IMG/VR virus record: IMGVR_UViG_3300022935_000005
Coordinates: 1 to 64,000 of that record
Length of the DNA: 64,000 nt
Reading direction: 5' to 3' (one strand)
Below the pieces are notes generated by a model. That model was not told the DNA's origin. It made no database searches and was given only the letters and a program-made list of their open reading frames with translations. This document shows, one piece after another, positions 6,035-51,283 of the stretch; the stretch's first letter is position 1, and every line of letters starts with the position of its first letter. The position numbers and the translations under genes are program-made.

Positions 6035-6051
6035 ACGGGAGTTTGCTCCCT

Positions 6052-6094
6052 AAGGGGGACCGGGGTTTTTGGGTTAACTCGGTCCCCCTTCTTT
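6052..6094 (+). terminator. Rho-independent terminator
   Basis: AAGGGGGACCGGG/CTCGGTCCCCCTT stem followed by CTTT. Confidence 0.75.
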
Positions 6095-6124
6095 ATACAA
6101 TCCTCTATAGACAGGAGGTAACCC

Positions 6125-6331
6125 GTGGCCGAAAAGAAAGTAACTCTTAACGAGATGATCGCTCAGATTCGAGAGTGGCATACTGAAGCTCTTAACATGC
6201 GTAACGATGGATGGACACAGCAGGCTTTTAAGGATCGACTAGAGTTCCTACATGCCCGTATGACAGCTGTGGTAGAGTCAATCAACCCTCCTCAGACGGC
6301 GCCGACAGAGAATAATAACGACAAAGAGTAG
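6125..6331 (+). CDS. Hypothetical protein
   Basis: AGGAGG SD, GTG start. Confidence 0.75.
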   Translation: MAEKKVTLNEMIAQIREWHTEALNMRNDGWTQQAFKDRLEFLHARMTAVVESINPPQTAPTENNNDKE

Positions 6332-6336
6332 ACATT

Positions 6337-6401
6337 CGTGCAATAGTGCTTTAACCTGTGGTATTATATAAATGATGGTGGGGAAGGAATAGAGCTTCTC
6401 C
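6337..6401 (+). promoter_or_regulatory. Early promoter plus 5' hairpin
   Basis: CGTGCAAT 6337, TGTGGTATTAT (TATTAT 6362), GGGGAAG/CTTCTCC stem 6380-6401. Confidence 0.85.
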
Positions 6402-6420
6402 CAAAACTACAGGAGTCCAC

Positions 6421-7821
6421 ATGGCAGACAAGACGACCGCAACAGACGCTCCCTTTGAGCACGCCTCTGAAGAGGTAGCCAAGGCATTTGACCTTCAGCC
6501 TCACCTCGTTGGTATGATGCTGGAGGAGCCGTTCTACACTAAGGTCCTTCGAATCCTGACCAAGACCCGGACTCGGAAGATCCCGACCGCCGGAGTTATT
6601 GCGAAGGACGGGGACCTGCAGATGTACTGGAACGACCGGTTCATGGCGGCTCTGCCCGGTAAGCAGATTCGGGGAGTCCTCAAGCATGAGATGCTCCACC
6701 TCATCCTCGAACACACCACCACTCGTAAGTACGAGCCTCACAAGGTTTGGAACTACGCCACTGACTTGGCGATCAACAGCCACCTCATGGACGAGCTTCC
6801 TGAGTTTGGTCTCTTCCCGGGTAAGGCGTTTAAGCCGCTGACTGAGGAACAACAGGAGCGAATGGGTGAGGCAGCTGTCAAGCAGTACGAGGCAGTGTCC
6901 AAGAAGATTGAAAGCTTCCCAGCTGGGCAGGCTGCTGAGTGGTACTTCGCGCGGCTCATGGAAGATGATGAAGTCAAGGAAGCCATTGAGAACCCGAAGC
7001 AGAACGGTAAGAGTCTGGCTGATGCTCTCCGCGATGGTGATGTGACCATCAACGAGAACGGTCAGATTTGTGATGCTGACGGTAACCCTCTCCCCACTGT
7101 CCCTGGTACGCTGGATGACCATGACGGCTGGGGCGAAATGAGCGATGAAGACCGTGAGTACATCAAGGCCAAGGTCAAGCAGGCTGCTGGTGACGCTGCC
7201 AAGGAGTGCGACCAGAAGGGTAGCTGGGGTTCGGTACCTGCAGAACTGCGGAAGCAGATCAAGGCAGCACTGGTCAACGAAGTTCCCTGGCAGAAGATCC
7301 TTGACCGCTTCTGTGGTTACAGCCGACGGGCCAACCGGACCACGAGCTACAGCCGCCTTCACAGCACCATGGGTCGTTTGGTTCCCGGTGCCAAGCGTGG
7401 GTACACGAGCTCGGTGGCAGCTTACATTGACCAGTCCGGCTCAGTCAGCGATCGTGAGCTGGCCCTCTGCTTCGGCGAGCTGGCTAACCTGGCCAAGAAC
7501 ACTGAGTTCACCTGCTACCACTTCGACACCGAGGTGGATGAGAAGAGCAAGACGGTATGGAAGCGTAAGGGTCACCCTGCCAACCGGACTCGCTGCGGTG
7601 GTACGGACTTCGCTGCTCCGACCGAGCACGCTGGAAAGCACAAGCGGGAGTTCGACGGGTACATCATCCTGACCGACGGCTACGCTCCTGACCCGGGTCC
7701 GAGCCGGTTGCCCCGAGCTTGGGTGGTTACCCCTGACGGAGCAGTTCAGGACTGGATGTTCAACTACAAGAAGGACGTCATCGTAAAGATGACTTGGCCA
7801 AAGAGTCTGCAGGAGGCGTAA
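6421..7821 (+). CDS. DUF2201-family protein: HExxH metallopeptidase-like domain plus vWA-like domain
   Basis: HEMLH, WNYATDLAIN, MIDAS DQSGS, GGTDF, ILTDG. Confidence 0.9.
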   Translation: MADKTTATDAPFEHASEEVAKAFDLQPHLVGMMLEEPFYTKVLRILTKTRTRKIPTAGVIAKDGDLQMYWNDRFMAALPGKQIRGVLKHEMLHLILEHTTTRKYEPHKVWNYATDLAINSHLMDELPEFGLFPGKAFKPLTEEQQERMGEAAVKQYEAVSKKIESFPAGQAAEWYFARLMEDDEVKEAIENPKQNGKSLADALRDGDVTINENGQICDADGNPLPTVPGTLDDHDGWGEMSDEDREYIKAKVKQAAGDAAKECDQKGSWGSVPAELRKQIKAALVNEVPWQKILDRFCGYSRRANRTTSYSRLHSTMGRLVPGAKRGYTSSVAAYIDQSGSVSDRELALCFGELANLAKNTEFTCYHFDTEVDEKSKTVWKRKGHPANRTRCGGTDFAAPTEHAGKHKREFDGYIILTDGYAPDPGPSRLPRAWVVTPDGAVQDWMFNYKKDVIVKMTWPKSLQEA

Positions 7822-15136: not shown

Positions 15137-15427
15137 ATGGCCAAAGTAAATGAAAATGGGATAGGAAGCAACTATAAGACTCTTGACCCAAACCCTATAA
15201 CTCACTTTAACGATCCAAGAATCAGTGTTGAGATTTATCCCGGGGCTTGGGGAGATGTGCACGCAAACGTTTCGTGTAAAGAGTTGAGTTATGACTCAGG
15301 CCTTAAGACATTTAAGACCGACCAAGAGGCAAGAACGTTTGCTCTAAACCTACACGATCAGCTTGTTACCAAACTTGATTCGTTAATAGAAAACGTTATG
15401 TTAAGAATCATCAGGGAGATGAGCTAA
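15137..15427 (+). CDS. Hypothetical protein with C-terminal LRIIRE motif
   Basis: ORF; ends LIENVMLRIIREMS. Confidence 0.7.
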   Translation: MAKVNENGIGSNYKTLDPNPITHFNDPRISVEIYPGAWGDVHANVSCKELSYDSGLKTFKTDQEARTFALNLHDQLVTKLDSLIENVMLRIIREMS

Positions 15428-16195
15428 TAGAAATTCTCTTATTGATCTAGTCTTTGGTCCAATAGCGTATTCATCAAACCTAACAGCTGCCGCTGACACA
15501 ATGGAGACAACTTCATTTTTGTGGTTCATTATCGGAGAACCACTTGAGCCACCTACCGCCGGCACTGTGAATAGACTTATCATCGATATATCACCGATAT
15601 AGTAACCATCGAAAACAGGAACTGCTAACGGAGAAGATAGCCCAGCTGGGTTGGCCATGTTGTATACTTTGGAATGGAGCATCATGTCCTTTTGTGCTAT
15701 CTCTAAACCGGGTCCTAAGTCCTTGTTCGCTTTGAGGAGACATATGTCATTGTTTGTATCGATCGCAACAATCTCTCCTCGTCCTTCTCTGCCAAATCCT
15801 GTAGTCAAGCTTATCCTGTAAGCCACCCTGAGATTTGACGCTAATGGCCCGGGTACCATTGGCATCTTTGGAGGCATGCATATATGACCTGCTGTAACGA
15901 TATATTCATCTTTACTTGAGGTCTCTAAAATAAACCCTGAACCCATGCTGGTTTGACTTCCCAAGATTCCTTCTACACACCCTTCGCTTTTATCATTTTC
16001 GCATGAGATTGAAAAAACAAACTCTTGTGTTGTCATGACAAATGACTCTATGGGGAAGTATGAGTTCTCTTTTTTGATTACAGTATTGTCTGTTGTTCTT
16101 ATAATTTTATTCGGAACTTTAATGTTGAGACAACCAGACAGCAGAAAGAATAAAGCCGTAATCGAGAGTAGCAGCTGAATGATTAACTTTCTCAT
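15401..16195 (-). CDS. Trypsin-like serine protease, probable lipoprotein
   Basis: Lipobox LLSGC; TAGHIC, NDICLL, GGSSGSP catalytic triad motifs. Confidence 0.88.
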   Translation of the reverse strand: MRKLIIQLLLSITALFFLLSGCLNIKVPNKIIRTTDNTVIKKENSYFPIESFVMTTQEFVFSISCENDKSEGCVEGILGSQTSMGSGFILETSSKDEYIVTAGHICMPPKMPMVPGPLASNLRVAYRISLTTGFGREGRGEIVAIDTNNDICLLKANKDLGPGLEIAQKDMMLHSKVYNMANPAGLSSPLAVPVFDGYYIGDISMISLFTVPAVGGSSGSPIMNHKNEVVSIVSAAAVRFDEYAIGPKTRSIREFLLAHLPDDS

Positions 16196-16258: not shown

Positions 16259-17047
16259 ATGACTGCGAAACAAAAAATTGTCTTGTTTGACATGGACGGT
16301 ACTCTGACACCAGCTAGAGAGCCAATAGAAGATGATATGATAGCTGCTTTAATACGTCTCACCAAGCACTCTAGAGTTGGTATCGTGACCGGATCAGACA
16401 TGGATTACGTAATGCAGCAGATGGGAAGAGCGTTTGATATCGGTGGGGTTCCAGTCAATAGGCTAGATGTTCTACCTTGCAACGGTACAAAATTCTATTC
16501 GTCAAACAGCTCCAACAATTACGTACTTGTCTCTGAAGCTGATATGCTTAAGGAAATTGGTCAGGCTGTATACAATAAGATTATTTCTAGATGTATGAGC
16601 TGGCAGACTGCTATCACTACCGACTATCCGAACCTTCCTTTTACCGGTACATTCTTTCAATACAGGGGCTCGTTATTAAACTGGTGTCCAATAGGGAGAT
16701 TAGCCGGCCAAGAACAAAGAAGCGCGTGGACCTCTTTGGATCAGCAAGAAGGAATAAGAGAGAAGTATTGTTCACAATTGTCTTCCCTACTTAAAGAAGA
16801 TGGTATCGACGTGACTGTTGCTCTTGGGGGTACAACTAGTTTTGATATATACCCGACTGGATGGGATAAAACATACGCTCTAAAGCACTACCCTGATCAT
16901 GATATATGGTTCGCCGGCGACCGCTGTGATCCAGGGGGGAACGATTGGCACATCTATGAGAAGCTAATTTCTGACAATCGGTCCTTTAAAGTTGAAAGCA
17001 CCTCGGAAACCATCGAACTTATCGATTCTCTAATCCTGACTTTCTGA
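16259..17047 (+). CDS. pmm: HAD-superfamily (eukaryotic-type) phosphomannomutase
   Basis: FDMDGTLT, VTGSD, CPIGR, GGTTSFDIYPTGWDKTYAL, GDRCDPGGND. Confidence 0.88.
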   Translation: MTAKQKIVLFDMDGTLTPAREPIEDDMIAALIRLTKHSRVGIVTGSDMDYVMQQMGRAFDIGGVPVNRLDVLPCNGTKFYSSNSSNNYVLVSEADMLKEIGQAVYNKIISRCMSWQTAITTDYPNLPFTGTFFQYRGSLLNWCPIGRLAGQEQRSAWTSLDQQEGIREKYCSQLSSLLKEDGIDVTVALGGTTSFDIYPTGWDKTYALKHYPDHDIWFAGDRCDPGGNDWHIYEKLISDNRSFKVESTSETIELIDSLILTF

Positions 17048-17072
17048 ACATGCTTTGCCCTGCTATTACAAT
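17045..17072 (+). promoter_or_regulatory. Promoter TGAACA-N16-TACAAT
   Basis: Same spacing as other TGWACA-N16 sites. Confidence 0.6.
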
Positions 17073-17091
17073 ATAGCATCAGGAGTAGTGC

Positions 17092-18717
17092 ATGAATCAA
17101 GAAATTATTTCTAAATTTCCGTATAAGTCAATTAGAGATCAGCAGCTTCAAGCTATAGAATTTTCAATCGACGCTATAAAGTCACAAGGCAAGAAGTTTG
17201 TGGTTATCGAGGCTGGTACCGGTGTCGGGAAATCAGCTATTGGATTAACAGTGGCAAGACTTCTTAGCGATGGAAGTTCAGAAAAGCATGCGCCCGGTGC
17301 ATACTTTTTAACCACTCAAAAAATTCTACAAGAACAGTATGTCAAAGACTTTGGTGGATTTAGCGGACCCATGAAGTCGATTAAATCTTCGTCTAACTAC
17401 TGTTGCAACTTCAATAAGGGAACTTCTTGTGGAGAAAGCTTAAGAGCTCTAAAGACAGCAGACAAATCGAGCAGGTTCTTTAAGTCATGCGCGTTTAATT
17501 GTGTATATAAGAAAGCCAAAGAATCTTTTGTCAATGGAACAGAGGGAGTTACTAACTTCCCTTACTTTCTAGCAGAGACACAATACTCTGGCAAAATTAC
17601 GCCAAGAGATGTTCTGGTAATTGATGAGGCCCACAATATCGATTCAGAGTTGAGCAAATTTATTGAGATCACCATCTCTGATAAGTTTTGCATGTCATTC
17701 TTGAATATGTCTATCCCGAATGGGATGACGCAACTACAGTACATTAAATGGATCAGTGATGTATATTTGAAGACAACAGTTTCAAAACTTACTCATCTTG
17801 AGAAGATGATGGAAAAATACATTGGGTTGAAGGAGAAAATTCGATCAGGCGAATTTGCATCAATTGCAAAAAAGTTTGAGATGCTTGATAAGCATGTGTG
17901 TAAGCTAAGAAGGTTCTTAGATTTGTATGACGGAAATAATTGGGTTATGAATGACATACCAAAAGACAATATGTCAAGTAGAAAACTACAATTTAAACCA
18001 ATTGATGTAGCACCGTATGCAAATGAAATGCTATATGATCATGGTCGTTACGTCGTATTAATGTCTGCGACAATTCTTGATAGAGATGCGTTTGCTTTGT
18101 CGGTCGGTATCCCTTCTCAGGATATGGCTTTTATATCTCTCGAGTCGCCGTTTCCTGTTGAGAATATGCCGATCATCTACGCCGGTATCGGAAAGATGAC
18201 GTACTCTGCTATTGACGGTACTTTGCCTAAGATGGTACAAGCTATTAAGCAGATCATTGATGAACACAAGAATGAAAAAGGCATCATACATTGTCATTCG
18301 TATAAGGTCGCTAGCTATATTAAGAAGAATATCAGAAGCACGAGAATCTTGATCCATGGATCTGATAACCGGGACGAAGTCTTGGAAAAGCACAAGAAGT
18401 CTAAAAAACCGACTGTTCTAATTTCTCCTTCAATGACAGAGGGTGTTGATCTAAAGGGAGAGTTAAGTAGATTTCAAGTTATCTGTAAAGTACCGTACCC
18501 TTACCTCGGTGACAAACTAATTAAAAAGAAGATGAATAAGTGGCAGTGGTGGTATCCGCTTCAGACTGCTAAGACCATCGTACAGTCTGTTGGAAGGTCA
18601 GTCAGGTCTAACGAGGATAGAGCAGTGACGTATATTCTGGATTCAGATTTCGAGAGGTTCTACAAATCTAATTCATCTCTTTTTCCAGCTAAGTTTAGGG
18701 AGTGTTTAAAATTATGA
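17092..18717 (+). CDS. DinG/Rad3-like SF2 helicase
   Basis: EAGTGVGKS, DEAH, MSATI, EGVDL, QSVGRSVR, Cys cluster. Confidence 0.9.
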   Translation: MNQEIISKFPYKSIRDQQLQAIEFSIDAIKSQGKKFVVIEAGTGVGKSAIGLTVARLLSDGSSEKHAPGAYFLTTQKILQEQYVKDFGGFSGPMKSIKSSSNYCCNFNKGTSCGESLRALKTADKSSRFFKSCAFNCVYKKAKESFVNGTEGVTNFPYFLAETQYSGKITPRDVLVIDEAHNIDSELSKFIEITISDKFCMSFLNMSIPNGMTQLQYIKWISDVYLKTTVSKLTHLEKMMEKYIGLKEKIRSGEFASIAKKFEMLDKHVCKLRRFLDLYDGNNWVMNDIPKDNMSSRKLQFKPIDVAPYANEMLYDHGRYVVLMSATILDRDAFALSVGIPSQDMAFISLESPFPVENMPIIYAGIGKMTYSAIDGTLPKMVQAIKQIIDEHKNEKGIIHCHSYKVASYIKKNIRSTRILIHGSDNRDEVLEKHKKSKKPTVLISPSMTEGVDLKGELSRFQVICKVPYPYLGDKLIKKKMNKWQWWYPLQTAKTIVQSVGRSVRSNEDRAVTYILDSDFERFYKSNSSLFPAKFRECLKL

Positions 18718-19217
18718 AAGTCTACAACAACATAGAAGATTTCTTGAAAGAGTCATGGGTACAAACAGAAAACCCTATATACATGACATCTGGTGGGTTT
18801 GATCCTTTACATATCGGACATCTTAGATGTATTTTAGAGACCGCTGACATGGCAGATCTTGATGGCGGACATGTCGTCGTCATTGTCAACGGTGACGGTT
18901 TCCTAAACAGAAAAAAAGGAAAGCCGTTCATGAATGAGGCAGAACGTGCTGAAATTATTGCTGGTATTCGTGGTGTTGATGCTGCTATCATTTGGGATGA
19001 TGGTGGCCAAACAGTAATTGGTGCCATTGAAAAACTTAAACCGACATTTTTTACCAAGGGTGGAGATAGAGCGGCACCTGAGGACATTCCTGAATGGGAC
19101 ATTTGTCAACAAGTCGGATGTGAAGTGTTGTTTAACATTGGTGGAGAGAAAATCCAGAGCTCTTCTTGGTTAATTGAAAACGCAGCTAACGAGGAAAATG
19201 ATGAGAAAAAAGATTGA
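18714..19217 (+). CDS. Cytidylyltransferase-like nucleotidyltransferase (RfaE-II/TagD-like)
   Basis: SGGFDPLHIGH, KGGD, KIQSSS. Confidence 0.88.
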   Translation: MKVYNNIEDFLKESWVQTENPIYMTSGGFDPLHIGHLRCILETADMADLDGGHVVVIVNGDGFLNRKKGKPFMNEAERAEIIAGIRGVDAAIIWDDGGQTVIGAIEKLKPTFFTKGGDRAAPEDIPEWDICQQVGCEVLFNIGGEKIQSSSWLIENAANEENDEKKD

Positions 19218-19542
19218 TAAGCCCTGGGGATTTGAGTTAATTTGGGCCCAGACAGAAGATTATGTAGCCAAGCTTATTGTTATCGAAGCCGGCCAACGGC
19301 TTTCGAAGCAATACCACGAAAAAAAGACAGAGACAGTGTATGTCATGGAAGGTGTGTTGTTGAATTATGACAAAGATGATAATGAAACAAGACTGATGCA
19401 AGGTGAAACGTTACATGTAGAACCTGGACAAGTTCACAGATTCTGTGCACCAGAAGATCGATATGTGAAAGTGATCGAAGTAAGTACGAACCACTTAGAT
19501 GATGTTGTCCGAATTAGCGATGATTACGGCAGGGGAGAATGA
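19201..19542 (+). CDS. Cupin, type II mannose-6-phosphate isomerase-like
   Basis: KPWG, LSKQYHEKKTE, PGQVHRF, DDVVRISDDYGR. Confidence 0.85.
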   Translation: MRKKIDKPWGFELIWAQTEDYVAKLIVIEAGQRLSKQYHEKKTETVYVMEGVLLNYDKDDNETRLMQGETLHVEPGQVHRFCAPEDRYVKVIEVSTNHLDDVVRISDDYGRGE

Positions 19543-19545
19543 ATA

Positions 19546-19953
19546 ATGGCTGGATCGGGATTCGTGCTATTTCGAGAAGACACTATTAGCAGCCCCTCGC
19601 CGCTGATGTTAGCATTAATTCGGAAAGATGGCATATTCGATATACCGAAAGGTCACAAGGAAAAGGGGGAGGATGATATTACTACAGCCACCAGAGAGTG
19701 CTTCGAGGAGTGTTCAGTGATGGTTAGGAGTGGTGATATTCTCTACAGCCCTTTCACCAACGGTGAGCTAACTTCATTTTGTGCTAGCACAAATCAAACT
19801 CCGACCATCACAAAAAACCCATCATCAGGTTTAGTTGAGCATGCAGGCTGGCGGTGGGTTACAAAGGATGAGTTTGTACAAAACTGCTTAAGCTACCTGA
19901 GACCTGGCGTTGAATATTTTTATTCAGAGCACTCTAGGAAATATAATCCATAG
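19546..19953 (+). CDS. NUDIX hydrolase
   Basis: PKGHKEKGEDDITTATRECFEE Nudix box. Confidence 0.88.
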   Translation: MAGSGFVLFREDTISSPSPLMLALIRKDGIFDIPKGHKEKGEDDITTATRECFEECSVMVRSGDILYSPFTNGELTSFCASTNQTPTITKNPSSGLVEHAGWRWVTKDEFVQNCLSYLRPGVEYFYSEHSRKYNP

Positions 19954-19996: not shown

Positions 19997-21166
19997 ATGT
20001 CGATATTCAAGAAGCATAAAACTATCGCAGACCGATCAGCTAGCGACAGAGCACGTCATAGAAAAAAGATCGAAAAAGCGATAAAAGACGGCATTCACAA
20101 TATCGTAGCAGAAGAATCTATCATCGGAGAAAGTGGAAAAAAGAAGTTTAAGATTCCAGTTAGGGGAATCAAAGAACATCGCTTTGTCTATGGAGACAAC
20201 GGATCCAGAAGAGCTGGTTCTGGTGAAGGCAACGATATTAGTCGCGGTCAAACAATCGGAAAAAAGAAGAAGCAAAAAGGTCAAGGAAACCCTGATAAAC
20301 CTGGTAACGAAAAAGGCGAAGAGTTCTACGAAGTAGAGTTAACTCTTGATCAAGTCGCAGAATATCTCTTTAAAGACTTAAAGCTTCCAAACTTTGAAGA
20401 CAAGAAGAATGCTCAAGTAATAACCAAGAAAATCAGAAGGAAAGGTTACAGGACAAAAGGCATCAGACCAAGACTAGATAAAAAGAAGTCTGCAATTCAA
20501 CGTATTAAGAGAATGAAGAAAGATGAGTTCGCGGGCAAAAGAGACTCCGACTCTGATGAGAACTTTAGTTTCTTGGAAAAGGATTTACGTTACAAGCACT
20601 TTAAAGTTACCGAAAAGCGTACTTCGAATGCTGCTATCTTCTTTTTGATGGATATATCTGGGTCTATGACTACTGAAAAGAAGTTCCTGTCGAGAAGCTT
20701 TTTCTTCCTACTTTATCATTTCATCCGTTCAAGATACGACACCGTTGAAATAAATTTTGTCGCATATGAATCTCAAGCTTATGAAGTGGATGAAAAAAGC
20801 TTCTTTGAACGTGGCTCATCTGGAGGTACGATCACATCAACTGGTGTCAAGATGGTGAACGAGATCATTGACTCCCGATACCATCCATCATCATGGAATA
20901 TATATACTTTTCACGCGTCTGACGGCGATAACTGGCCAAGTGATAATGAGGCTTTGCTAAGCCAAATTGATGAGATGATCCCGAAGGTTCAATTCTATGG
21001 CTATTGTGAAATTGAGCCAAGCGCAGACAGGATACAGTTTTTAAGAGATAAAAGCTTAGGAGTACTCTTTGAAGGTTTAGTGTATGACAAGTTTAAGTCT
21101 TCCTCTATTACTTGTAAGGAAGATATATGGGAGGCATTCAATAGTTTCTTTGGGGGTGAGTTGTGA
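19997..21166 (+). CDS. yeaH: YeaH/YhbH (DUF444) vWA-like protein
   Basis: DRARH, DLRY, LMDISGSM, SGGT, YHPSSWNIYTFHASDGDNW. Confidence 0.92.
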   Translation: MSIFKKHKTIADRSASDRARHRKKIEKAIKDGIHNIVAEESIIGESGKKKFKIPVRGIKEHRFVYGDNGSRRAGSGEGNDISRGQTIGKKKKQKGQGNPDKPGNEKGEEFYEVELTLDQVAEYLFKDLKLPNFEDKKNAQVITKKIRRKGYRTKGIRPRLDKKKSAIQRIKRMKKDEFAGKRDSDSDENFSFLEKDLRYKHFKVTEKRTSNAAIFFLMDISGSMTTEKKFLSRSFFFLLYHFIRSRYDTVEINFVAYESQAYEVDEKSFFERGSSGGTITSTGVKMVNEIIDSRYHPSSWNIYTFHASDGDNWPSDNEALLSQIDEMIPKVQFYGYCEIEPSADRIQFLRDKSLGVLFEGLVYDKFKSSSITCKEDIWEAFNSFFGGEL

Positions 21167-22467
21167 ACTTCTTTGATGAACTAGCAGAGTGGGATGAAAA
21201 GCTTTGTAAGATGGCAAAAGAGCACGGACTAGATTGGTTTCCGCTTGCTTACGAGACTTGTGATTACTACGAAATGATTGGAGCTATGGCTTATCACGGC
21301 ATGCCGTCGCATTACAGTCACTGGAGCTTCGGTAAGTCTTTTGAAAGAAACCATACGATGTATGGAATGGGAATGCAGGGGTTACCTTATGAGATGATCA
21401 TCAATAGTAATCCATCGCTAGCTTATCTCATGGAAGAAAATCCGATGTACCTACAGGTTCTAATCATGGCTCACTGTATTGGACACTCCGACTTCTTTAA
21501 GAATAACATTACCTTTAAGCATACACACCCAGAAAACATTATATTAAGGATGAGAAATGCTAAGAGGTTTATCGATAAACTGATCGAAGATCCAAGCATA
21601 GGGATCGATGCAGTAGAAGATATTCTAGATTCAGCGCACGCTTTATCAATGAATGTTCCTCACAGGTATGTACCGTATGTTTCACAGAAGGACCAAAAGC
21701 GACAGTTAGTCAGTGACATCAAGGGTGGTTTATACGATAACTCTTTCCATGTTCCTGATCCGGAAAAAGTTCCAGTCTCTAATGAAATAAATATTCTAGC
21801 ATTCTTGGCAGACCAAAGCCCGATCTTGGAAGAGTGGCAAAGAGACCTACTGTTGATTGTAGAAGAAGAAGCTCACTACTTCATGCCACAGATAAGAACT
21901 AAGATTATGAACGAAGGATGGGCGAGTTATTGGCACTATCGTCTTATGCATGAGCTCGAGCTTCCTTCGTCGATGCATATACCTTTTCTTAAAACTCACA
22001 ATGAGGTTGTAAGACCTCATCCAGCATCCATTAACCCATATCATCTAGGGTTTCATTTATTTAGAAAGATAGAAGAAAGACATGGGTTAGAGGAATGCTT
22101 TATTGCCAGAGAATCTTTAAATGATGAAAGCTTCATAAGGCAGTATTTAACACAAGAAGACTGCGAAGAGTTAGAGCTGTTTAGCTTTTCGCTAAAAAAA
22201 GATGAATACGTTGTTGACGATGTCTCTGATGATGAGGGGTGGAAAAATATCAAGGAAGACCTAATCAAACAGGTCGGAGGTAATAGTATACCAATAATAG
22301 AGATTGACAATGTGGACGAATCTAATGTGCTTTGCTTAATTCATGAACATGATGGAAGGGACCTAGAGCTAGACTACGCAGATGCAGTTGTGCACCATAT
22401 TAGCAAGCTATGGGGCGATGTAGTAAAGCTTGATACCATCATTGAAGACGAACCTTTTGAGATCTAA
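21163..22467 (+). CDS. spoVR: SpoVR/YcgB family protein
   Basis: GMPSHYSHWSFGK, YEMIINSNP, GHSDFFKNN, TKIMNEGWASYWH, NPYHLG. Confidence 0.95.
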   Translation: MNFFDELAEWDEKLCKMAKEHGLDWFPLAYETCDYYEMIGAMAYHGMPSHYSHWSFGKSFERNHTMYGMGMQGLPYEMIINSNPSLAYLMEENPMYLQVLIMAHCIGHSDFFKNNITFKHTHPENIILRMRNAKRFIDKLIEDPSIGIDAVEDILDSAHALSMNVPHRYVPYVSQKDQKRQLVSDIKGGLYDNSFHVPDPEKVPVSNEINILAFLADQSPILEEWQRDLLLIVEEEAHYFMPQIRTKIMNEGWASYWHYRLMHELELPSSMHIPFLKTHNEVVRPHPASINPYHLGFHLFRKIEERHGLEECFIARESLNDESFIRQYLTQEDCEELELFSFSLKKDEYVVDDVSDDEGWKNIKEDLIKQVGGNSIPIIEIDNVDESNVLCLIHEHDGRDLELDYADAVVHHISKLWGDVVKLDTIIEDEPFEI

Positions 22468-22479
22468 CCCGGGGAAAAC

Positions 22480-24408
22480 ATGTCTGATAAAAACTTTCTA
22501 GAAATCATTAAGAGCCAAAGAGAAGAGAAGAAGCGCGAGAAGTTCGCCGGTACTTTTCTTGAATATCTTTCTTTAGTAGAGGAAGATCCAAGTATTACTG
22601 ACCACGCGCATAAGCGTCTGTATGACGCTGTAGTTTCTCACGGGACAGGGGTGATGGAAGACTCTGATCCTCGAAAGCACAAATTGTTTGATGGTGATAA
22701 CGTAAAAACCTACGAATACTTTCAATCAGAATTTTTTGGAATGGAATCAGTTATCGCGAAGCTTATGAGGTTTATGCGCTCTGCTGCTCTTAAGGGTGAA
22801 GAAAGTCGACAAGTTCTATTGTTGATGGGTCCTGTAGGAGCTGGTAAGTCTGCGCTAACAGAGCACATTAAGAAGTCTTTGGATGGGCAACCATACTATC
22901 ACCTTGTAGGAGACCCTCAGCGAGGAGAGCCACTTCAGTTGTTACCTCGTTCCCTAAGAGACCGATTTAATGAAATGCTGGGTGTCAGTATCGAGGGTGA
23001 CCTTTCCCCAGTCGCTAGACATCTACTATTTGAAGAATACGATGGTCAATACGAAAAGTTTAAAGTAAAAGAAACTACATTCTCCCAACGGGCTCGTCGA
23101 GGTGTTGCATCTGTTCCGCCAATGGACGCAAACTCACAAGATGTATCAGTGTTGATCGGTTCAGAAGATATTTCGAAACTTGATAGGTATTCAGAAGACG
23201 ACCCACGAGCGTTATCTCTAAATGGCGCCTTCAACGTAGGTAATAGAGGTATTGTTGAGCTTGTGGAGGTCTTTAAGAATGAAATTGAGTTTCTCCACAC
23301 AATCATTACAGCGACCCAGGAGAAGAGAGTTCCTGCCCCTGGAAAGCACGACATGATTTACTTCGATGGAGTCATTCTCGCGCATTGTAATGAAGCTGAA
23401 TGGAATCGATTCCAGAGCGAGCACACTAACGAGGCTATCTTAGACCGTATTGTTAAGATTGATGTGCCATACGTTTTGGAGCTAGAGCAAGAAATTAAGA
23501 TTTATGAAAAGATTCTTTCTCGCTCTAACTTTAAAGCCCACATTGCTCCTCATACGATTAGAATTGCTTCGATGTTTTCCGTGCTTAGCCGGCTTAAGGA
23601 AAGTCAAAAGTGCGATCTTCTTACGAAGCTTAAGCTTTACAACGGCGAAGAAGTTGTTGAAAAGGGTAGAGTTAAGAAGATCGATATTAAAGACCTTCGT
23701 GATGAAGCACCGAATGAGGGTATGAATGGTATTTCTACAAGATTTATTATGAAAGCCGTCGATAATGCATTGAGCGATTCTGATAAAGACTTCATCACTC
23801 CAATCTCAATATTAGATTCTCTCGTCAAGCAGGTCAAGGATCAGATTATAGATAGAGAGTTCCAGAGTCGTTGTCTTGAGTTGATAAGGAACGTAGTAAG
23901 AGGTGAATACCTCAAGATGCTTGAAAAAGAAATTGCTAAGGCGTTCATCACAGCATATGAGCCGCAAGCGCAGTCTATCTTTGAAAACTATATGGATCAT
24001 GCAGAGGCTTACACAACGAAGAGCAGGCTTAAGGATCGTATCACAAAAGAAGAGATGCAGCCTGATGAGAACTTTATGAGGTCTATTGAGTCAACAATCG
24101 GAGTCAGTGGTTCGGGTAAGGATGGCTTTAGAGCTGACGTGACTGCTTACATGTTCTCTAAGATGAGAAGAGGGGAGAAGGTAGACTATACTTCCTATGA
24201 GCCTCTTAAGGAAGCTATCGAGACCTATCTAATCACGTCAGTAAAAGACTTGGCCAGGATTGTTACTAAGTCTAGAGCAAGAGATGAAGAACAGCAACAG
24301 AAATATTCAGAGATGGTTCAGACGCTAATTGATGAATATGGATACACTGCTGACTCTGCAGAAGAAGTTCTAACTTACGCCAGTAATAATCTCTGGAGAG
24401 ACAGTTAA
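22480..24408 (+). CDS. prkA: PrkA/YeaG AAA+ serine protein kinase family
   Basis: LLLMGPVGAGKS, GNRGIVELVEVFK, LAHCNEAEW, NEAILDR, EGMNGISTRF. Confidence 0.95.
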   Translation: MSDKNFLEIIKSQREEKKREKFAGTFLEYLSLVEEDPSITDHAHKRLYDAVVSHGTGVMEDSDPRKHKLFDGDNVKTYEYFQSEFFGMESVIAKLMRFMRSAALKGEESRQVLLLMGPVGAGKSALTEHIKKSLDGQPYYHLVGDPQRGEPLQLLPRSLRDRFNEMLGVSIEGDLSPVARHLLFEEYDGQYEKFKVKETTFSQRARRGVASVPPMDANSQDVSVLIGSEDISKLDRYSEDDPRALSLNGAFNVGNRGIVELVEVFKNEIEFLHTIITATQEKRVPAPGKHDMIYFDGVILAHCNEAEWNRFQSEHTNEAILDRIVKIDVPYVLELEQEIKIYEKILSRSNFKAHIAPHTIRIASMFSVLSRLKESQKCDLLTKLKLYNGEEVVEKGRVKKIDIKDLRDEAPNEGMNGISTRFIMKAVDNALSDSDKDFITPISILDSLVKQVKDQIIDREFQSRCLELIRNVVRGEYLKMLEKEIAKAFITAYEPQAQSIFENYMDHAEAYTTKSRLKDRITKEEMQPDENFMRSIESTIGVSGSGKDGFRADVTAYMFSKMRRGEKVDYTSYEPLKEAIETYLITSVKDLARIVTKSRARDEEQQQKYSEMVQTLIDEYGYTADSAEEVLTYASNNLWRDS

Positions 24409-24776: not shown

Positions 24777-26033
24777 ATGAAAAACAAAGTTATTGCTGGT
24801 ACCTCACTTGATCGAATTAATTCTGATCTACTAGATCATATCAAGTCATTTGTTGAATCTATAGATAGCAAGAGTTATTCGCTTGTTGCGGAAGGCGGCC
24901 TATATTCATTAGGGTGGCTTGATTCATTTCGTTTGTTTTTAGAGCAGTATAAAGATAACGACTCTCCTCAAAAGAAGATGATTGTCTCATCTTTGCACAA
25001 CCTTAACAAGACATGCCCATGGGCAATACCTTTATACTTCGAAGAATTTTTTAGTTGTAATAAGGGGTTTGGCGTCCCAAAGAGAATTAGCTCTTTAGAG
25101 TTGTTTAATGGTATGAATAGAGTTAATGATGAGTTCATAACAGCCAATTCATCTACGCTCTATGACGCAATTCTACAATCAGGCTCATCAGGAAGTTTAA
25201 CTCTTAAGCACCACGATGATGCATCTCCTTTTGTAGAAACCCACTTGGGATTTAAAACCCTAGTATCTCTAAATGAGTTTTTTCATGGTTATGTTGGTTC
25301 CAGAGAAATAAAGGACTGTAAAGTACTTGTTGTAAACGGGGCTATTATAGATGTCAGTGAAATACATCATATCCTAGAATATGCATACGACACCAAAGAC
25401 AACATTATCATAGTGTCCAGCGCGTTTTCAGATGATGTTTCAAATACACTCTACGTAAACTGGAGCTCTGGTAAGACTCATATCATACCTTTTGTGTTAC
25501 CAGATTCAATAGAAACGATAAATGAAGCAAAAGATATATGCACAGCTTTGGGTATAGTTCCAGTTGATAAAGCAAATGGACTAAGACTTAGTAACATCGA
25601 CTTGAAAGAGCACAAGGGAATAGATGTGTATTATGACAGTAGCAAAGATACGCTTAGACTTTTACTAGATGATGTTGGCAGTTTACGAATCCACAAAGCA
25701 AAAATGAGTCTACAGGACCAGTACGAAAACGAAGAAGTTGATGATGTGAAAAGTATACTCTCAGAAAGAATAAGCAGAATGTCTGCTAGAAATACTGTCA
25801 TCTACACGAGACTTTCTAACACGAGCAAAGGCCTGCTAGAGGATCGAGCAGGAGCAGTGTTCTCGTACTTTTCAAGATGTGCTAAGCAGAATGTAGTAGA
25901 AATGAATGACGAATATTTCGTAAAATATCTACCAGCTAATGATGCTGCTAAAGCAGTCAACATGGCAAAATCTGATCGTAGATCCTTAAGTAGTATTAAG
26001 GCCATCTTAAGGATAGATGATGAAGCATGTTGA
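24777..26033 (+). CDS. Degenerate GroEL/Cpn60-like protein
   Basis: Apical-domain-like KVLVVNGAIIDVSEIHHILE..NIIIVSSAFSDDVSNTLYVN; ILSERISRMS; no GDGTT motif. Confidence 0.65.
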   Translation: MKNKVIAGTSLDRINSDLLDHIKSFVESIDSKSYSLVAEGGLYSLGWLDSFRLFLEQYKDNDSPQKKMIVSSLHNLNKTCPWAIPLYFEEFFSCNKGFGVPKRISSLELFNGMNRVNDEFITANSSTLYDAILQSGSSGSLTLKHHDDASPFVETHLGFKTLVSLNEFFHGYVGSREIKDCKVLVVNGAIIDVSEIHHILEYAYDTKDNIIIVSSAFSDDVSNTLYVNWSSGKTHIIPFVLPDSIETINEAKDICTALGIVPVDKANGLRLSNIDLKEHKGIDVYYDSSKDTLRLLLDDVGSLRIHKAKMSLQDQYENEEVDDVKSILSERISRMSARNTVIYTRLSNTSKGLLEDRAGAVFSYFSRCAKQNVVEMNDEYFVKYLPANDAAKAVNMAKSDRRSLSSIKAILRIDDEAC

Positions 26034-28160: not shown

Positions 28161-29480
28161 TTGAGTAACGTCAGAAAAAGGTTCGTATTAGATACTAGCG
28201 TTCTGTTATATGACAAAACAGCAATACATTCTTTTCCCGGAAATGATGTCATCTTGCCGCTCCAAGTGATGGATGAGATTGATAAATTCAAGGAAAAGCC
28301 GGGAGTTATTGGAGAGTCAGCCAGATACGTTAACAGGTTTCTAGATGAAATGCGAGATTTTGGTAGACTAGATGTGGGAGTAGAAGTTCCAGAAGAATTC
28401 GCGGTCTCGCAAACTGTTATGATTAAGATTGAGGATAGAGTTGATTCTCTACCTAACGGATTAAAGGCCGACCGCCCCGACAACAAGATACTAGCAACTT
28501 GTCTCAACGAGGCTCAGAATGACGATCAGAGGCCCCTTGTCGTAATTACCAAAGACATTAACCTCCGAGTTAAGTGCGATGCACTGGGGATAGCTTCAGA
28601 GGACTACTATAAGGACCATATCGAGCAGGACAGCGCTGCCTTTACGGGGAGGAGAGAAATAGAGGTTACCAAGTCACAGCTTGACCTGTTTTTCCTTGAA
28701 GGAGAAGTAAAACTCACCGACCCGGCGCTCATCTTAATGCCTAATGAGTTTGTTGTGCTTAAGTCTGCTGAGAGTGGTGGATCTGGCTTAGGCATGTTTG
28801 ATGGAAACCAGATTGTTAAACTTAGACATGAGCCAGGAAAAGCAATGTCTGATTTTCAATCAAAAAATAAAGAGCAGAGATTTGCCGTAGAAGCATTGTT
28901 AGATAGTGACATAGAGCTGGTAACACTGACAGGCTTAGCTGGTTCAGGAAAGACTTACGTTGCGCTGATGGCTGGCCTTGACGGATTACAAGAGGGAAGG
29001 TACAACAGAATCGTAATCAGTAGGTCCATTCAACCTGTTGGTCGCGATTTAGGTTATTTACCCGGTGACGTCGACGAAAAAATGGCACCGTGGTTAGCTC
29101 CTATTATGGATAACTTTAGAACCATGATGGGTGATAAGGACTTTACGTATTTCAATATCATGATGGACAAGGGAGAGCTTGAAGTTGCTCCTCTATCATT
29201 TATTCGCGGTCGGACTTTCAATGATGCCTATGTAATAGTCGACGAGGCTCAAAACGCCACAATCCATGAGCTAAAGACTATCATCACCCGTGTTGGCAAG
29301 AATTCTAAAATCGTTCTTCTTGGAGATACAGATCAAATTGACACTCCGTACATCGACAGGCTAAGCAACGGATTGTCAATCGTTATCGATAAATTCAAGG
29401 ACAGAAAAGAACACGCGCATGTTCAGCTCGCCAAGGGACAGCGCTCCAATATAGCTTCAATTGCCTCAGAAATTCTTTAA
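28161..29480 (+). CDS. phoH: PIN-PhoH fusion (PhoH2/YlaK type)
   Basis: VLDTSVLL and DNKIL..ITKDINLRVK (PIN); GLAGSGKT, GYLPGD, RGRTF, DEAQN, GDTDQID. Confidence 0.93.
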   Translation: MSNVRKRFVLDTSVLLYDKTAIHSFPGNDVILPLQVMDEIDKFKEKPGVIGESARYVNRFLDEMRDFGRLDVGVEVPEEFAVSQTVMIKIEDRVDSLPNGLKADRPDNKILATCLNEAQNDDQRPLVVITKDINLRVKCDALGIASEDYYKDHIEQDSAAFTGRREIEVTKSQLDLFFLEGEVKLTDPALILMPNEFVVLKSAESGGSGLGMFDGNQIVKLRHEPGKAMSDFQSKNKEQRFAVEALLDSDIELVTLTGLAGSGKTYVALMAGLDGLQEGRYNRIVISRSIQPVGRDLGYLPGDVDEKMAPWLAPIMDNFRTMMGDKDFTYFNIMMDKGELEVAPLSFIRGRTFNDAYVIVDEAQNATIHELKTIITRVGKNSKIVLLGDTDQIDTPYIDRLSNGLSIVIDKFKDRKEHAHVQLAKGQRSNIASIASEIL

Positions 29481-40250: not shown

Positions 40251-40273
40251 AAAAAGAATAACGGAAGAAGAAT

Positions 40274-42159: not shown

Positions 42160-42160
42160 G

Positions 42161-42826: not shown

Positions 42827-42852
42827 AATGAGTCTAATGAAAGTGGTTTAAT

Positions 42853-43449: not shown

Positions 43450-43459
43450 AGGATACAAC

Positions 43460-44332: not shown

Positions 44333-44347
44333 ACAAAGGAAAATAGC

Positions 44348-45719: not shown

Positions 45720-45849
45720 GTAGCTATACAGACAGCTTTACAACTATCTAGAGTGTTGTATTTCACTATTCCTTCGTTTTTCTTAATATAAATAGAAGTA
45801 GTACGTAGCGTAATGTGTAAACATGTCGTTCCGCAAATAAGGTTTATCT

Positions 45850-48715: not shown

Positions 48716-48753
48716 ACTTTGAAAAACTAAATTTATTATTTAGGGAGTACTTT

Positions 48754-50297: not shown

Positions 50298-50325
50298 AGT
50301 CACAAAATAAAGTATAATATTCTTT

Positions 50326-51204: not shown

Positions 51205-51283
51205 TCTCATTAGATAAATATACTTCTGAAATCGTTTTGATATGATTACTCACAAGGTACCCAACATTTAGACAGGGCTTACA

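What the first reader, a model, noticed from the sequence alone, without database searches (positions are those of the whole stretch)
19997..24408. Complete yeaH-spoVR-prkA stress/dormancy module in a phage, in rearranged order
Seen: three intact, tightly coupled genes with phage-like composition. Established: PrkA/YeaG, YeaH/YhbH and SpoVR/YcgB co-occur in bacteria, usually with prkA first, and are linked to stationary phase, nitrogen starvation and sporulation. YeaH has a MIDAS-like DISGS, making this a second AAA+/vWA pair in the window. Inference: the phage manipulates host dormancy or starvation signalling.
Basis: partly seen in the sequence, partly recalled or inferred. Interest (0 to 1): 0.65.

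Follow-up and report, generated by a model that had tools for sequence, protein, structure and literature searches.

The report
Phage-borne PrkA-YeaH-SpoVR stress module
A 281-kb T4-like aquatic phage carries intact copies of three bacterial starvation and sporulation genes (yeaH, spoVR, prkA) in a permuted order; its whole phage lineage has kept them under strong selection, so they are real, old phage genes, but what they do during infection has not been tested.

Summary
Window 19997-24408 holds three intact, translationally coupled genes: YeaH/YhbH (DUF444, with a vWA MIDAS motif DISGS), SpoVR/YcgB and PrkA/YeaG. All three score far above the Pfam cut-offs.

The window is the start of a 280,913-bp T4-like jumbo phage record from a salt marsh. 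The trio is not a recent or contaminating insert:
- Its composition matches the rest of the genome.
- All 42 related aquatic viral loci in the survey tree carry it in the same order and the same neighbourhood.
- Synonymous sites are saturated, while omega is about 0.03-0.04 in the closest pair.
- In all three gene trees the phage clade is a deep monophyletic branch beside a Clostridia/'delta'/Binatia subfamily.

Every bacterial locus where the genes lie together on one strand reads prkA-yeaH-spoVR. The permuted order yeaH-spoVR-prkA occurs only in this clade and, independently, in Thermus phages such as phiYS40. Other large phages captured the trio separately and kept the bacterial order.

What it does in infection is inferred, not shown. 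I favour an ATP-driven protein-remodelling machine: an AAA+ motor (PrkA), a vWA adaptor (YeaH) and SpoVR, whose model has a zincin-like fold. I propose it resets the physiology of starved hosts. Phage copies of these genes were already annotated, so this is a new member of a known kind.

The parts
19997..21166 (+). yeaH/yhbH homologue (DUF444): a basic N-terminal region followed by a C-terminal vWA domain with a complete MIDAS motif (D219-x-S221-x-S223, T278, D309/D311).
   Evidence: Pfam PF04285, E 1.8e-99. TIGR02877 scores 370 bits, below its equivalog cut-off of 468. Sequence. The motifs are invariant in alignment A2.
21163..22467 (+). spoVR/ycgB homologue. The model shows a zincin-like N-terminal domain (about residues 1-340) with invariant H104-x3-H108 and N250-E251-G-W-A...H258, followed by a small C-terminal alpha/beta domain.
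   Evidence: Pfam PF04293, E 3.9e-119, plus PF24755. AlphaFold model: pLDDT 93.2, pTM 0.90. VIA-align gives Z 8-12 to many zinc metallopeptidases. Invariant columns.
22480..24408 (+). prkA/yeaG homologue: an AAA+ domain (Walker A GPVGAGKS, residues 117-124) plus the PrkA C-terminal domain.
   Evidence: Pfam PF08298, E 9.5e-137, and PF06798, E 1.7e-80. PDB 9xip 'Serine protein kinase', E 1.2e-90. The invariant columns include G117, P118, G120, K123 and S124.
21163..21166 (+). GTGA overlap of the yeaH stop with the spoVR start, preceded by GGGGGTGAG. This is a translational-coupling junction.
   Evidence: Sequence read; ORF table.
22468..22479 (+). 12-nt spacer between spoVR and prkA containing GGGGAAAAC before the ATG. 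No terminator-like site lies between the genes.
   Evidence: Sequence read. The promoter and terminator scan found no more sites than in shuffled sequence.
24777..26033 (+). Conserved downstream neighbour, not shown to belong to the module: a divergent, shortened protein with the GroEL/Hsp60 fold. By eye it has no recognisable GDGTT nucleotide-binding motif.
   Evidence: A homologue sits in the same position in at least 24 clade loci. Model pLDDT 88. Foldseek against GroEL/Hsp60: E 1e-20, probability 1.00. PHROG 'chaperonin groEL', E 8e-5.

Best explanation
The three genes are a captured bacterial PrkA-YeaH-SpoVR module. It became a vertically inherited, apparently core part of an abundant aquatic lineage of T4-like jumbo phages, probably more than once across phages as a whole.

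Shown:
- The genes are intact, translationally coupled and under strong purifying selection.
- They form a deep monophyletic phage clade in all three gene trees.
- They have the fixed, permuted order yeaH-spoVR-prkA.

Inferred mechanism:
- The three proteins work together, as in bacteria, as an ATP-driven protein-remodelling or processing machine.
- PrkA is the AAA+ motor.
- YeaH is the MIDAS-bearing vWA adaptor.
- SpoVR, with its zincin-like fold, is the substrate-binding or hydrolytic partner.
- Expressed during infection, the machine acts on host proteins to impose or bypass the starvation and stationary-phase programme that the host's own module controls. Nutrient-limited cells then stay able to produce phage.

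The identity and evolutionary statements are near certain. The mechanism and its target are hypotheses.
For: Identity.

Phage context.

Conservation:
- In the two viral-contig scans, every locus with PrkA at least 63% identical and room upstream reads yeaH-spoVR-prkA, inside the syntenic block helicase, cytidylyltransferase, cupin, NUDIX, trio, GroEL-like.
- Both records picked by capsid alone that are at least 75% complete also carry PrkA.

Selection:
- pS is 0.8-0.9, which is saturated.
- pN is 0.09-0.19 for prkA, 0.14-0.29 for spoVR and 0.16-0.30 for yeaH.
- Omega is 0.031-0.039 in the closest pair.
- PrkA is the best conserved gene of the block.

Phylogeny:
- The clade has support of 99-100 in the PrkA, YeaH and SpoVR trees, next to the Clostridia and 'delta'/Binatia types.
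- Nearest bacterial identity is only 53-59% for PrkA, 38-45% for YeaH and 41-47% for SpoVR.

Repeated capture by large phages: the viral label needs at least 11 changes on a 156-row tree, and several carriers are verified T4-like genomes of 200-390 kb.

Joint action in bacteria: yeaG, yeaH and ycgB are cofit at r > 0.7 in six species (bioRxiv 10.1101/072470).

Link to starvation: PMC4664914 (title and abstract).

PrkA is an AAA+ protein whose Walker A motif is essential, but it is not a kinase, and when pure it is not a protease (PMC9512850, PMC13001217).

SpoVR zincin-like fold and invariant His/Glu motifs.

Proteostasis and stress neighbours: the GroEL-like gene and PhoH.

RNA libraries hold the region.
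Against: - No experiment or read-level expression data are available.
- The host is unknown, so it is unknown whether it has its own module or experiences the relevant starvation.
- The complex prediction gave no verdict.
- SpoVR lacks the catalytic Glu of HExxH (position 105 is Cys or Val). The fold Z scores (at most 11.9) are within the range that helical models can reach by chance, according to the tool's own note. Foldseek found nothing.
- Mutant phenotypes of the bacterial module differ between species, so 'starvation' may not be its general role.
- In Thermus phages the trio lies between the portal/head and terminase genes. That fits a phage-internal role equally well.
Confidence: 0.5

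Rival explanations
1. Phage-internal proteostasis or assembly role. The AAA+/vWA/zincin-like trio, perhaps with the neighbouring GroEL-like protein, remodels or processes the phage's own proteins rather than host regulators. Targets could be its large proteome, its oversized capsid protein or its virion components.
For: - In Thermus phage Lalka8 the trio sits between the portal and minor head genes and TerL; in phiYS40 it lies next to the terminase.
- In the aquatic clade a GroEL-fold gene always follows prkA, and the genome has a second, full-length Cpn60.
- A second AAA+ / vWA-metallopeptidase pair is also core to the lineage.
- Carriers are almost all large phages.
Against: - In the window the trio lies among nucleotide-sugar, helicase and PhoH genes, about 80-90 kb from the capsid and terminase genes.
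- The module was taken from bacteria, where it has no virion to act on.
- No proteomic evidence could be consulted.
Confidence: 0.25
2. Kinase signalling. Phage PrkA phosphorylates host enzymes or regulators to rewire metabolism, as reported for E. coli YeaG acting on isocitrate lyase, with YeaH and SpoVR as accessory factors.
For: - The PrkA C-terminal domain is present and conserved.
- YeaG is reported to autophosphorylate and to phosphorylate AceA, as cited within PMC9512850.
- Price et al. proposed a signalling pathway.
Against: - B. subtilis and B. anthracis PrkA show no kinase activity, and the C-terminal P-loop is degenerate (PMC9512850, PMC13001217).
- Most of the columns invariant across six divergent phage PrkAs lie in the AAA+ half.
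Confidence: 0.1
3. Literal sporulation control. The phage induces or blocks endospore formation in a spore-forming host, as was proposed for viral spoVR in oxygen-minimum-zone viromes.
For: - The family names come from Bacillus sporulation.
- The nearest bacterial subfamily includes Clostridia.
- PMC8940887 reads viral spoVR this way.
Against: - The same subfamily is equally present in non-sporulating 'delta', Binatia and Bdellovibrionales genomes.
- The module is widespread in non-sporulating bacteria.
- The phage is a T4-like myovirus abundant in marine, estuarine, freshwater and salt-marsh samples, including Tara. Its capsid is nearest to those of phages of Microcystis, Flavobacterium and Rhodothermus.
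Confidence: 0.03
4. Anti-defence or superinfection-exclusion function unrelated to the module's bacterial role.
For: Large phages carry many such genes, and AAA+/vWA pairs occur in conflict systems. PrkA has a weak PADLOC match to DolB, E 3.9e-4.
Against: - There are no real PADLOC matches for any of the three proteins.
- All three genes are conserved with their bacterial motifs intact, so the ancestral biochemistry appears to be retained.
Confidence: 0.07
5. Recent bacterial insert, host flank or assembly chimera.
For: This does occur elsewhere. The GenBank record of Enterobacter phage LAU1 begins with host yeaG-yeaH next to tail-fibre genes. Some short IMG/VR contigs with the bacterial-type trio may also be host DNA.
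Against: - Composition is native.
- The same trio, order and flanks occur in all 42 diverged relatives in the survey tree.
- Synonymous sites are saturated while proteins are conserved.
- No bacterial PrkA in one genome each of 185,579 species exceeds 59% identity.
Confidence: 0.01

Closest known systems
Bacterial prkA-yeaH-spoVR operon (E. coli yeaGH + ycgB; B. subtilis prkA-yhbH + spoVR)
   Same: The same three Pfam families, domain architectures and motifs: Walker A, MIDAS and the SpoVR His/Glu columns. The genes are adjacent on one strand.
   Different: - The gene order is cyclically permuted, with prkA last rather than first.
- Scores fall below the NCBIfam equivalog cut-offs: 403 vs 576, 370 vs 468 and 276 vs 679 bits.
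- Identity to any bacterial copy found is at most 59%, 45% and 47%.
- The genes are encoded by a lytic-type T4-like phage.
Thermus phages phiYS40, TMA, phiLo, Lalka and MN1
   Same: A phage-borne trio in the same permuted order, yeaH-spoVR-(x)-prkA.
   Different: - Only about 31% PrkA identity, with very long branches.
- A separate origin: the AU test rejects a joint clade, p 2.5e-5.
- An extra gene lies between spoVR and prkA in phiYS40.
- The trio sits next to head and terminase genes.
Ralstonia phage RsoM2USA, the huge phages LR756502/504/511 and many IMG/VR jumbo phages
   Same: Large phages, several of them T4-like, carrying all three genes.
   Different: - They keep the bacterial order prkA-yeaH-spoVR.
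- They branch with the proteobacterial/Bacteroidota YeaG type or with the Anaerolineales/Bdellovibrionota type.
- The RsoM2USA paper lists the genes without treating them as a module (PMC8504454).
MoxR-type AAA+ / vWA systems, including the AAA_5 + DUF2201 pair at window 4949-7821
   Same: An AAA+ ATPase combined with a MIDAS vWA protein and a metallopeptidase-like domain. That is the same three kinds of parts, and both sets are conserved in this phage lineage.
   Different: - A different AAA+ clade and a different peptidase-like family.
- No profile similarity between SpoVR and DUF2201.
- In DUF2201 the peptidase-like and vWA parts are fused in one protein.
FtsH/YME1 (clade III AAA+ fused to an M41 zinc metalloprotease)
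   Same: PrkA has been classed as a clade III AAA+ with a pore loop, like YME1 (PMC13001217). SpoVR's model resembles the zincin fold. Together they look like a split version of the same logic.
   Different: - The proteins are separate.
- SpoVR lacks the HExxH glutamate.
- No proteolysis by the trio has been shown.
- The resemblance is by fold only, with middling Z.
Stress-response auxiliary genes of marine phages (PhoH, MazG) and viral 'spoVR' counted as an AMG in OMZ viromes
   Same: Host-derived genes tied to starvation physiology and carried by marine phages. PhoH lies 4 kb downstream, at 28161-29480. spoVR was the most abundant 'sporulation' AMG in ETNP viromes (PMC8940887).
   Different: Here it is a complete three-gene machine, not a single enzyme. 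The virome study saw only the Pfam hit and interpreted it as sporulation.

Membership tests
PrkA/YeaG family | N-terminal AAA_PrkA domain with an intact Walker A motif, plus the PrkA C-terminal domain | tested here: met
   PF08298 scores 456 bits and PF06798 scores 271 bits, both against a cut-off of 25. GPVGAGKS is invariant. PDB 9xip, E 1.2e-90, aligned over residues 21-636.
PrkA/YeaG family | Equivalog of E. coli YeaG (NCBIfam NF011999, cut-off 576 bits) | tested here: not met
   403 bits. The protein belongs to a separate subfamily, 33-35% identical to the proteobacterial YeaG type.
YeaH/YhbH (DUF444) | DUF444 domain with a vWA MIDAS motif (DxSxS...T...D) | tested here: met
   PF04285, 334 bits. 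MD[IVT]SGSM, GGT and SDGD are invariant in alignment A2.
YeaH/YhbH (DUF444) | Equivalog of the sporulation protein YhbH (TIGR02877, cut-off 468 bits) | tested here: not met
   370.5 bits.
SpoVR/YcgB | SpoVR domain plus the SpoVR_C domain | tested here: met
   PF04293, 398 bits, and PF24755, 32.9 bits. 35 columns are invariant across 35 phage and bacterial sequences.
SpoVR/YcgB | Equivalog NF008737 (cut-off 679 bits) | tested here: not met
   275.8 bits.
PrkA-YeaH-SpoVR module | All three genes adjacent on one strand | tested here: met
   ORF table, a 4-nt overlap and a 12-nt spacer.
PrkA-YeaH-SpoVR module | Canonical order prkA-yeaH-spoVR | tested here: not met
   The window reads yeaH-spoVR-prkA. 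Every bacterial locus where the genes lie together on one strand reads prkA-yeaH-spoVR.
PrkA-YeaH-SpoVR module | The three proteins act together (cofitness or physical complex) | tested here: inconclusive
   Shown for bacteria only. The PrkA + YeaH complex prediction returned no verdict. Co-inheritance and congruent trees in phages are indirect evidence.
Phage auxiliary (host-derived) gene | Encoded inside a bona fide phage genome, flanked by phage genes and conserved in the lineage | tested here: met
Phage auxiliary (host-derived) gene | Expressed during infection | tested here: inconclusive
   Six metatranscriptomic runs hold 0.28-0.94 of the region's sampled words, as contigs only.
Phage auxiliary (host-derived) gene | Alters host physiology to the phage's benefit | not testable with these tools
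   Needs a cultured phage-host pair.
Zincin (gluzincin-like) metallopeptidase fold, considered for SpoVR | Zincin fold: a beta-sheet, then an active-site helix, then a ligand helix | tested here: inconclusive
   VIA-align gives Z 8-12 to about 45 zincins among the top 50 rows. Foldseek found no match, and the tool warns that helical models can reach such Z values by chance.
Zincin (gluzincin-like) metallopeptidase fold, considered for SpoVR | HExxH motif with the catalytic Glu | tested here: not met
   The motif is H104-[C/V]-x-G-H108. Both histidines are invariant, but there is no Glu at position i+1 or i+3.

The most novel reading that the evidence does not exclude
Large phages have captured the PrkA-YeaH-SpoVR machine many times, and two unrelated phage lineages independently permuted it to yeaH-spoVR-prkA. 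If so, the module gives a general, strong benefit to big phages infecting slow-growing cells.

SpoVR would then be the missing zincin-like working subunit of a split, FtsH-like AAA+ machine. That would explain why purified PrkA alone is neither a kinase nor a protease. The compact phage versions would give a tractable handle on a bacterial stress module whose biochemistry has been unresolved for decades.
Probability: 0.2. Interest if true: 0.8.

Novelty: new member of a known kind. Interest (0 to 1): 0.55.

Why it matters
PrkA/YeaG, YeaH and SpoVR/YcgB form one of the most widespread bacterial stress modules that still has no agreed biochemistry.

Finding it as a core, strongly constrained gene set of a very abundant aquatic jumbo-phage lineage matters for three reasons:
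- Thousands of near relatives occur in marine, estuarine and freshwater data.
- At least three other phage groups captured the module independently.
- Together these indicate that it does something generally useful during infection of nutrient-limited cells.

It also corrects the reading of viral 'spoVR' hits in viromes as sporulation genes.

Phage versions, the permuted order, and the zincin-like model of SpoVR next to an AAA+ motor and a vWA adaptor yield concrete, testable hypotheses for how the module works.

Tried and rejected
- Nucleotide search against GenBank phages found no near relative; only protein-level hits at about 31% identity.
- Complex prediction with PrkA 25-636 and YeaH 1-388 gave no verdict (score 0.00). 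It is not evidence either way.
No read-level expression, strand or transcript-end data exist.
- Disclosure: the local tblastn query file used still contained the orf92 translation made earlier. Its rows were discarded. No other tool received those letters.
- Foldseek of the SpoVR model against the PDB found nothing.
- The protein-atlas feature search for SpoVR had no usable hit. The atlas fold search returned only a mostly viral SpoVR cluster.
- hhalign of the SpoVR profile against the window's DUF2201 protein showed no relationship.
- The sigma-70 promoter and terminator scan found no more sites than in shuffled sequence. The T4 late-promoter motif TATAAATA is not enriched and is absent near the trio.
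- PADLOC returned no meaningful defence-family hit.
- Literature searches for the trio as a phage module, for phiYS40 'serine kinase', and for DUF444 in phages found nothing beyond gene lists.
- The word search, the viral and genome scans and the family scans answered the question.

Full report
**What is in the window.**
- Three + strand ORFs occupy 19997-21166 (389 aa), 21163-22467 (434 aa) and 22480-24408 (642 aa).
- Pfam assigns them to DUF444/YeaH (E 1.8e-99), SpoVR plus SpoVR_C (E 3.9e-119) and AAA_PrkA plus PrkA_C (E 9.5e-137 and 1.7e-80).
- NCBIfam finds the same families, but every score is below the equivalog cut-off: 370 vs 468, 276 vs 679 and 403 vs 576 bits. These are diverged subfamily members, not orthologues of the E. 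coli or Bacillus proteins.
- YeaH carries FFLMDISGSM, GGT and SDGD. Together these form a complete vWA MIDAS motif, invariant across phage and bacterial homologues.
- PrkA carries the Walker A motif GPVGAGKS and a set of AAA+ columns that are invariant among six very divergent phage PrkAs. It matches the solved 'Serine protein kinase' 9xip at E 1.2e-90 over nearly its full length.
- The yeaH stop overlaps the spoVR GTG start (GTGA). prkA begins 12 nt after the spoVR stop. Both starts follow G-rich Shine-Dalgarno-like runs.
- No promoter or terminator signal exceeds the shuffled controls.

**What genome this is.**
- The window is the first 64 kb of a 280,913-bp IMG/VR virus record, CheckV 92% complete.
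- The record has a T4-type Gp23 capsid gene (637 aa, oversized), a large terminase, seven tRNAs, and 311 of 356 ORFs on one strand.
- The nearest capsid proteins in GenBank belong to Microcystis phage Mel-JY01, Flavobacterium 'immuto' phages, Rhodothermus phage RM378 and a huge uncultured phage, at 36-51% identity. This is an uncultured 'far-T4' lineage with an unknown host.
- Thirteen salt-marsh metagenome runs hold the trio region completely. Freshwater, estuary and marine runs hold a third to a half of its sampled words.

**Not a recent or contaminating insert.**
- *Composition.* GC3 of the three genes is 0.395-0.407 against a genome median of 0.415. Their codon-usage distance lies at the 11th-83rd percentile of the genome's long genes.
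- *Abundance.* The word search returned 7,659 proteins at E <= 1e-20. The best 120 are all at least 74% identical, come from JGI, ENA, Logan and Tara data, and sit on contigs up to 290 kb.
- *Synteny.*
  - In the two viral-contig scans, every locus with PrkA at least 63% identical and room upstream shows yeaH-spoVR-prkA on one strand. These loci form the 42-row aquatic clade of the 156-row survey tree, counting a 'Methylococcaceae TMED69' MAG contig.
  - Where the flanks are held, the trio usually sits inside the block helicase, cytidylyltransferase, cupin, NUDIX, trio, orf92, orf418.
- *The MAG contig.* The TMED69 contig (305,838 bp) also carries the oversized Gp23 and the DUF2201 gene. It is a misbinned phage genome.
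- *Core status.* Records chosen by capsid similarity alone carry PrkA in both cases that are at least 75% complete, and in 2 of 8 fragments. The trio looks core to the lineage.
- *Selection.*
  - Between clade members, synonymous sites are saturated (pS 0.8-0.9).
  - pN is 0.09-0.19 for prkA, 0.14-0.29 for spoVR and 0.16-0.30 for yeaH.
  - In the closest pair omega is 0.031, 0.039 and 0.038.
  - PrkA is better conserved than the neighbouring helicase.

**Origin and gene order.**
- A scan of one genome from each of 185,579 prokaryote species found more than 598 relatives. Apart from the misbinned phage contig, the best reach only 53-59% (PrkA), 38-45% (YeaH) and 41-47% (SpoVR) identity.
- These best matches belong to Clostridia, Negativicutes, 'delta proteobacteria', Binatia and Bdellovibrionales. 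The Bacillus/Paenibacillus type is 37-39% identical and the proteobacterial YeaG type 33-35%.
- Every bacterial locus where the genes lie together on one strand reads prkA-yeaH-spoVR. Two Paenibacillus loci have yeaH-spoVR convergent to prkA.
- Maximum-likelihood trees of PrkA (96 rows), YeaH (48) and SpoVR (45) each recover the aquatic phage clade with 99-100 SH-aLRT support, on a long stem. It sits in an unresolved group with the Clostridia and 'delta'/Binatia types. The three trees agree, so the trio moved as a unit.
- Other phage groups sit elsewhere, consistently across the trees:
  - Thermus phages lie on very long branches.
  - The huge phage LR756511 groups with Anaerolineales, Planctomycetota and Bdellovibrionota.
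  - RsoM2USA and LR756502/504 group with Bacteroidota inside the YeaG type.
- An AU test rejects a joint clade of the aquatic and Thermus phages (delta lnL 99.4, p 2.5e-5). The caveat is that I named the group after seeing the tree.
- On a 156-row FastTree the gene-order state changes only twice, in the aquatic clade and in the Thermus-phage clade. The viral label needs at least 11 changes.
- Several carriers with the bacterial order are verified T4-like genomes of 200-390 kb. Two complete records of 215 and 279 kb lack a Gp23 match.
- The trio has therefore been captured repeatedly by large phages, and the permuted order arose twice. I did not find any bacterial donor with the permuted order, but only the best 80 bacterial loci were examined.

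**How it may work.** This part is inference.
- From the literature:
  - YeaG is needed for adaptation to sustained nitrogen starvation (PMC4664914, title and abstract).
  - B. subtilis PrkA binds and hydrolyses ATP, needs its Walker A lysine for sporulation, and shows no kinase activity (PMC9512850).
  - Stringently purified B. anthracis PrkA has neither kinase nor protease activity. It oligomerises with ATP and is classed as a clade III AAA+ protein with a pore loop, like YME1 (PMC13001217).
- New here, an AlphaFold model of the phage SpoVR:
  - The model has pLDDT 93.2 and pTM 0.90.
  - Foldseek finds nothing for it.
  - The exhaustive aligner places residues 1 to about 340 on zinc-metallopeptidase folds at Z 8-12. 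The hits include M1 aminopeptidases, leukotriene A4 hydrolase, M3 and M32 peptidases, thermolysin and DUF885. About 45 of the top 50 rows are zincins.
  - The tool warns that such Z values can arise by chance for helical models, so this is a lead, not a finding.
- SpoVR motifs. SpoVR has an invariant H104-x3-H108 on one helix and an invariant N250-E251-G-W-A...H258 on a later helix, plus invariant E77, E152 and D321. It has no Glu in the HExxH position, where residue 105 is Cys or Val. It may be an atypical metallohydrolase or a pseudopeptidase that binds substrates.
- Proposed machine. An AAA+ motor, a MIDAS adaptor and a zincin-like protein resemble a split FtsH-like or MoxR/vWA/peptidase machine. 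The same window holds that architecture in another form (AAA_5 + DUF2201), and that pair is also conserved in all five related records tested.
- Neighbourhood.
  - The gene that follows prkA in at least 24 clade members (orf418) has the GroEL/Hsp60 fold (Foldseek E 1e-20).
  - PhoH lies 4 kb downstream.
  - The neighbourhood is about proteostasis and stress rather than obviously about kinase signalling.
- Favoured and rival readings. I therefore favour an ATP-driven protein-remodelling machine that acts on host proteins to set the physiological state of nutrient-limited cells. The main rival is a phage-internal proteostasis or assembly role. That rival fits the position of the trio between the portal/head and terminase genes in Thermus phages.

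**Expression.** Six salt-marsh metatranscriptomic runs hold 0.94, 0.52, 0.51, 0.37, 0.30 and 0.28 of the region's sampled words. This is compatible with transcription in nature. It rests on contigs only, and DNA carry-over cannot be excluded.

**Comparison with what is known.**
- PHROGs already holds families for all three proteins: phrog_19072, phrog_35217 and phrog_22605, all labelled 'unknown function'.
- The phiYS40 record (accession DQ997624) annotates SpoVR and a serine kinase.
- RsoM2USA lists PrkA and SpoVR among its annotated ORFs without linking them (PMC8504454).
- An OMZ virome study counted spoVR as its most abundant 'sporulation' AMG and read it as sporulation control (PMC8940887).
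- No paper within reach treats the trio as a phage module, notes its permuted order, or describes repeated capture.
- The window's trio is thus a new member of a known kind. The added value is the evolutionary picture and the SpoVR fold lead.

**Limits.**
- The host is unknown.
- The trees are unrooted and based on the best 80 bacterial loci plus viral scans capped at 600 candidate stretches.
- The Thermus-phage branches are very long.
- Some short IMG/VR contigs with bacterial-type trios may be host DNA. The GenBank record of Enterobacter phage LAU1, which starts with host yeaG-yeaH, shows this can happen.
- The complex prediction gave no verdict.
- One exception to that rule: the local tblastn query file still held the orf92 translation made earlier. 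Its rows were discarded.

Noticed in passing
window 24777-26033 (+): The gene after prkA and orf92 encodes a divergent, shortened (418 aa) protein with the GroEL/Hsp60 fold (Foldseek E 1e-20, probability 1.00). By eye it has no GDGTT-type nucleotide-binding motif. A homologue occupies the same position in at least 24 related phage loci at only 15-45% identity. The genome also has a full-length Cpn60 at G000 183,009-184,496.
   Followed up: partly
window 4949-6034 and 6421-7821 (+): The other AAA+/vWA pair (AAA_5 MoxR-like ATPase plus DUF2201 metallopeptidase/vWA) has a strikingly different composition: GC 0.58-0.60 and GC3 0.70-0.74, against a genome median GC3 of 0.415, with codon-usage distance in the 96th-99th percentile. 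Yet the DUF2201 protein is conserved at 47-65% identity in all five related phage records tested. The first ~10 kb of the record is GC-rich (0.50-0.55) as a whole. This is unexplained.
   Followed up: partly
L023 (NHDW01000006.1, 'MAG: Methylococcaceae bacterium TMED69', contig of 305,838 bp): The assembly with this 'bacterial' MAG contig carries the permuted trio (PrkA 74% identical), the oversized T4-type Gp23 and the DUF2201 gene; the last two lie on one contig. It is almost certainly a misbinned jumbo-phage genome of the same lineage.
   Followed up: partly
window 16259-19953 (+): Directly upstream of the trio lies a syntenic block: phosphomannomutase-like HAD, a DEAD/ResIII helicase, a cytidylyltransferase-like protein, a cupin (mannose-6-phosphate isomerase type) and a NUDIX hydrolase. 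Much of the block is conserved in many relatives. It is either a nucleotide-sugar or an NAD/ADP-ribose pathway; I did not resolve which.
   Followed up: no
window 36771-54771 (+): A long run of glycosyltransferases (GT2, GT4) and a DegT/DnrJ aminotransferase. This is a large sugar-modification cluster for a phage.
   Followed up: no
G000 111,193-113,106 (L020:379-2292): The Gp23-type major capsid protein is 637 aa. The Pfam match is split into two parts (profile 3-64 and 128-356), which implies a large insertion. The same oversized form (587-672 aa open frames) occurs in related records.
   Followed up: no
window 28161-29480 (+): A PhoH-like phosphate-starvation-inducible ATPase (phrog_2765, E 9.5e-99) lies 4 kb downstream of the trio. 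It is a second starvation-associated gene in the same early part of the genome.
   Followed up: no
window 15401-16195 (-): A trypsin-like serine peptidase (PF13365, E 1e-10) on the minority strand, just upstream of the block that contains the trio.
   Followed up: no
They were left out of all later searches, and orf92 was not characterised.
   Followed up: no
L107 (MN688132.1, Enterobacter phage LAU1, 1-3308): This GenBank phage record starts with YeaG-YeaH next to lambdoid tail-fibre genes. It looks like a host flank of an excised prophage rather than phage cargo, and it inflates counts of 'phage PrkA'.
   Followed up: partly
L029 (Lutibacter sp. B2, JADPRS010000007.1): This Bacteroidota genome carries a trio that groups with Clostridium and other Bacillota sequences in all three gene trees. 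The cause is either contamination of the assembly or a recent transfer between phyla.
   Followed up: no
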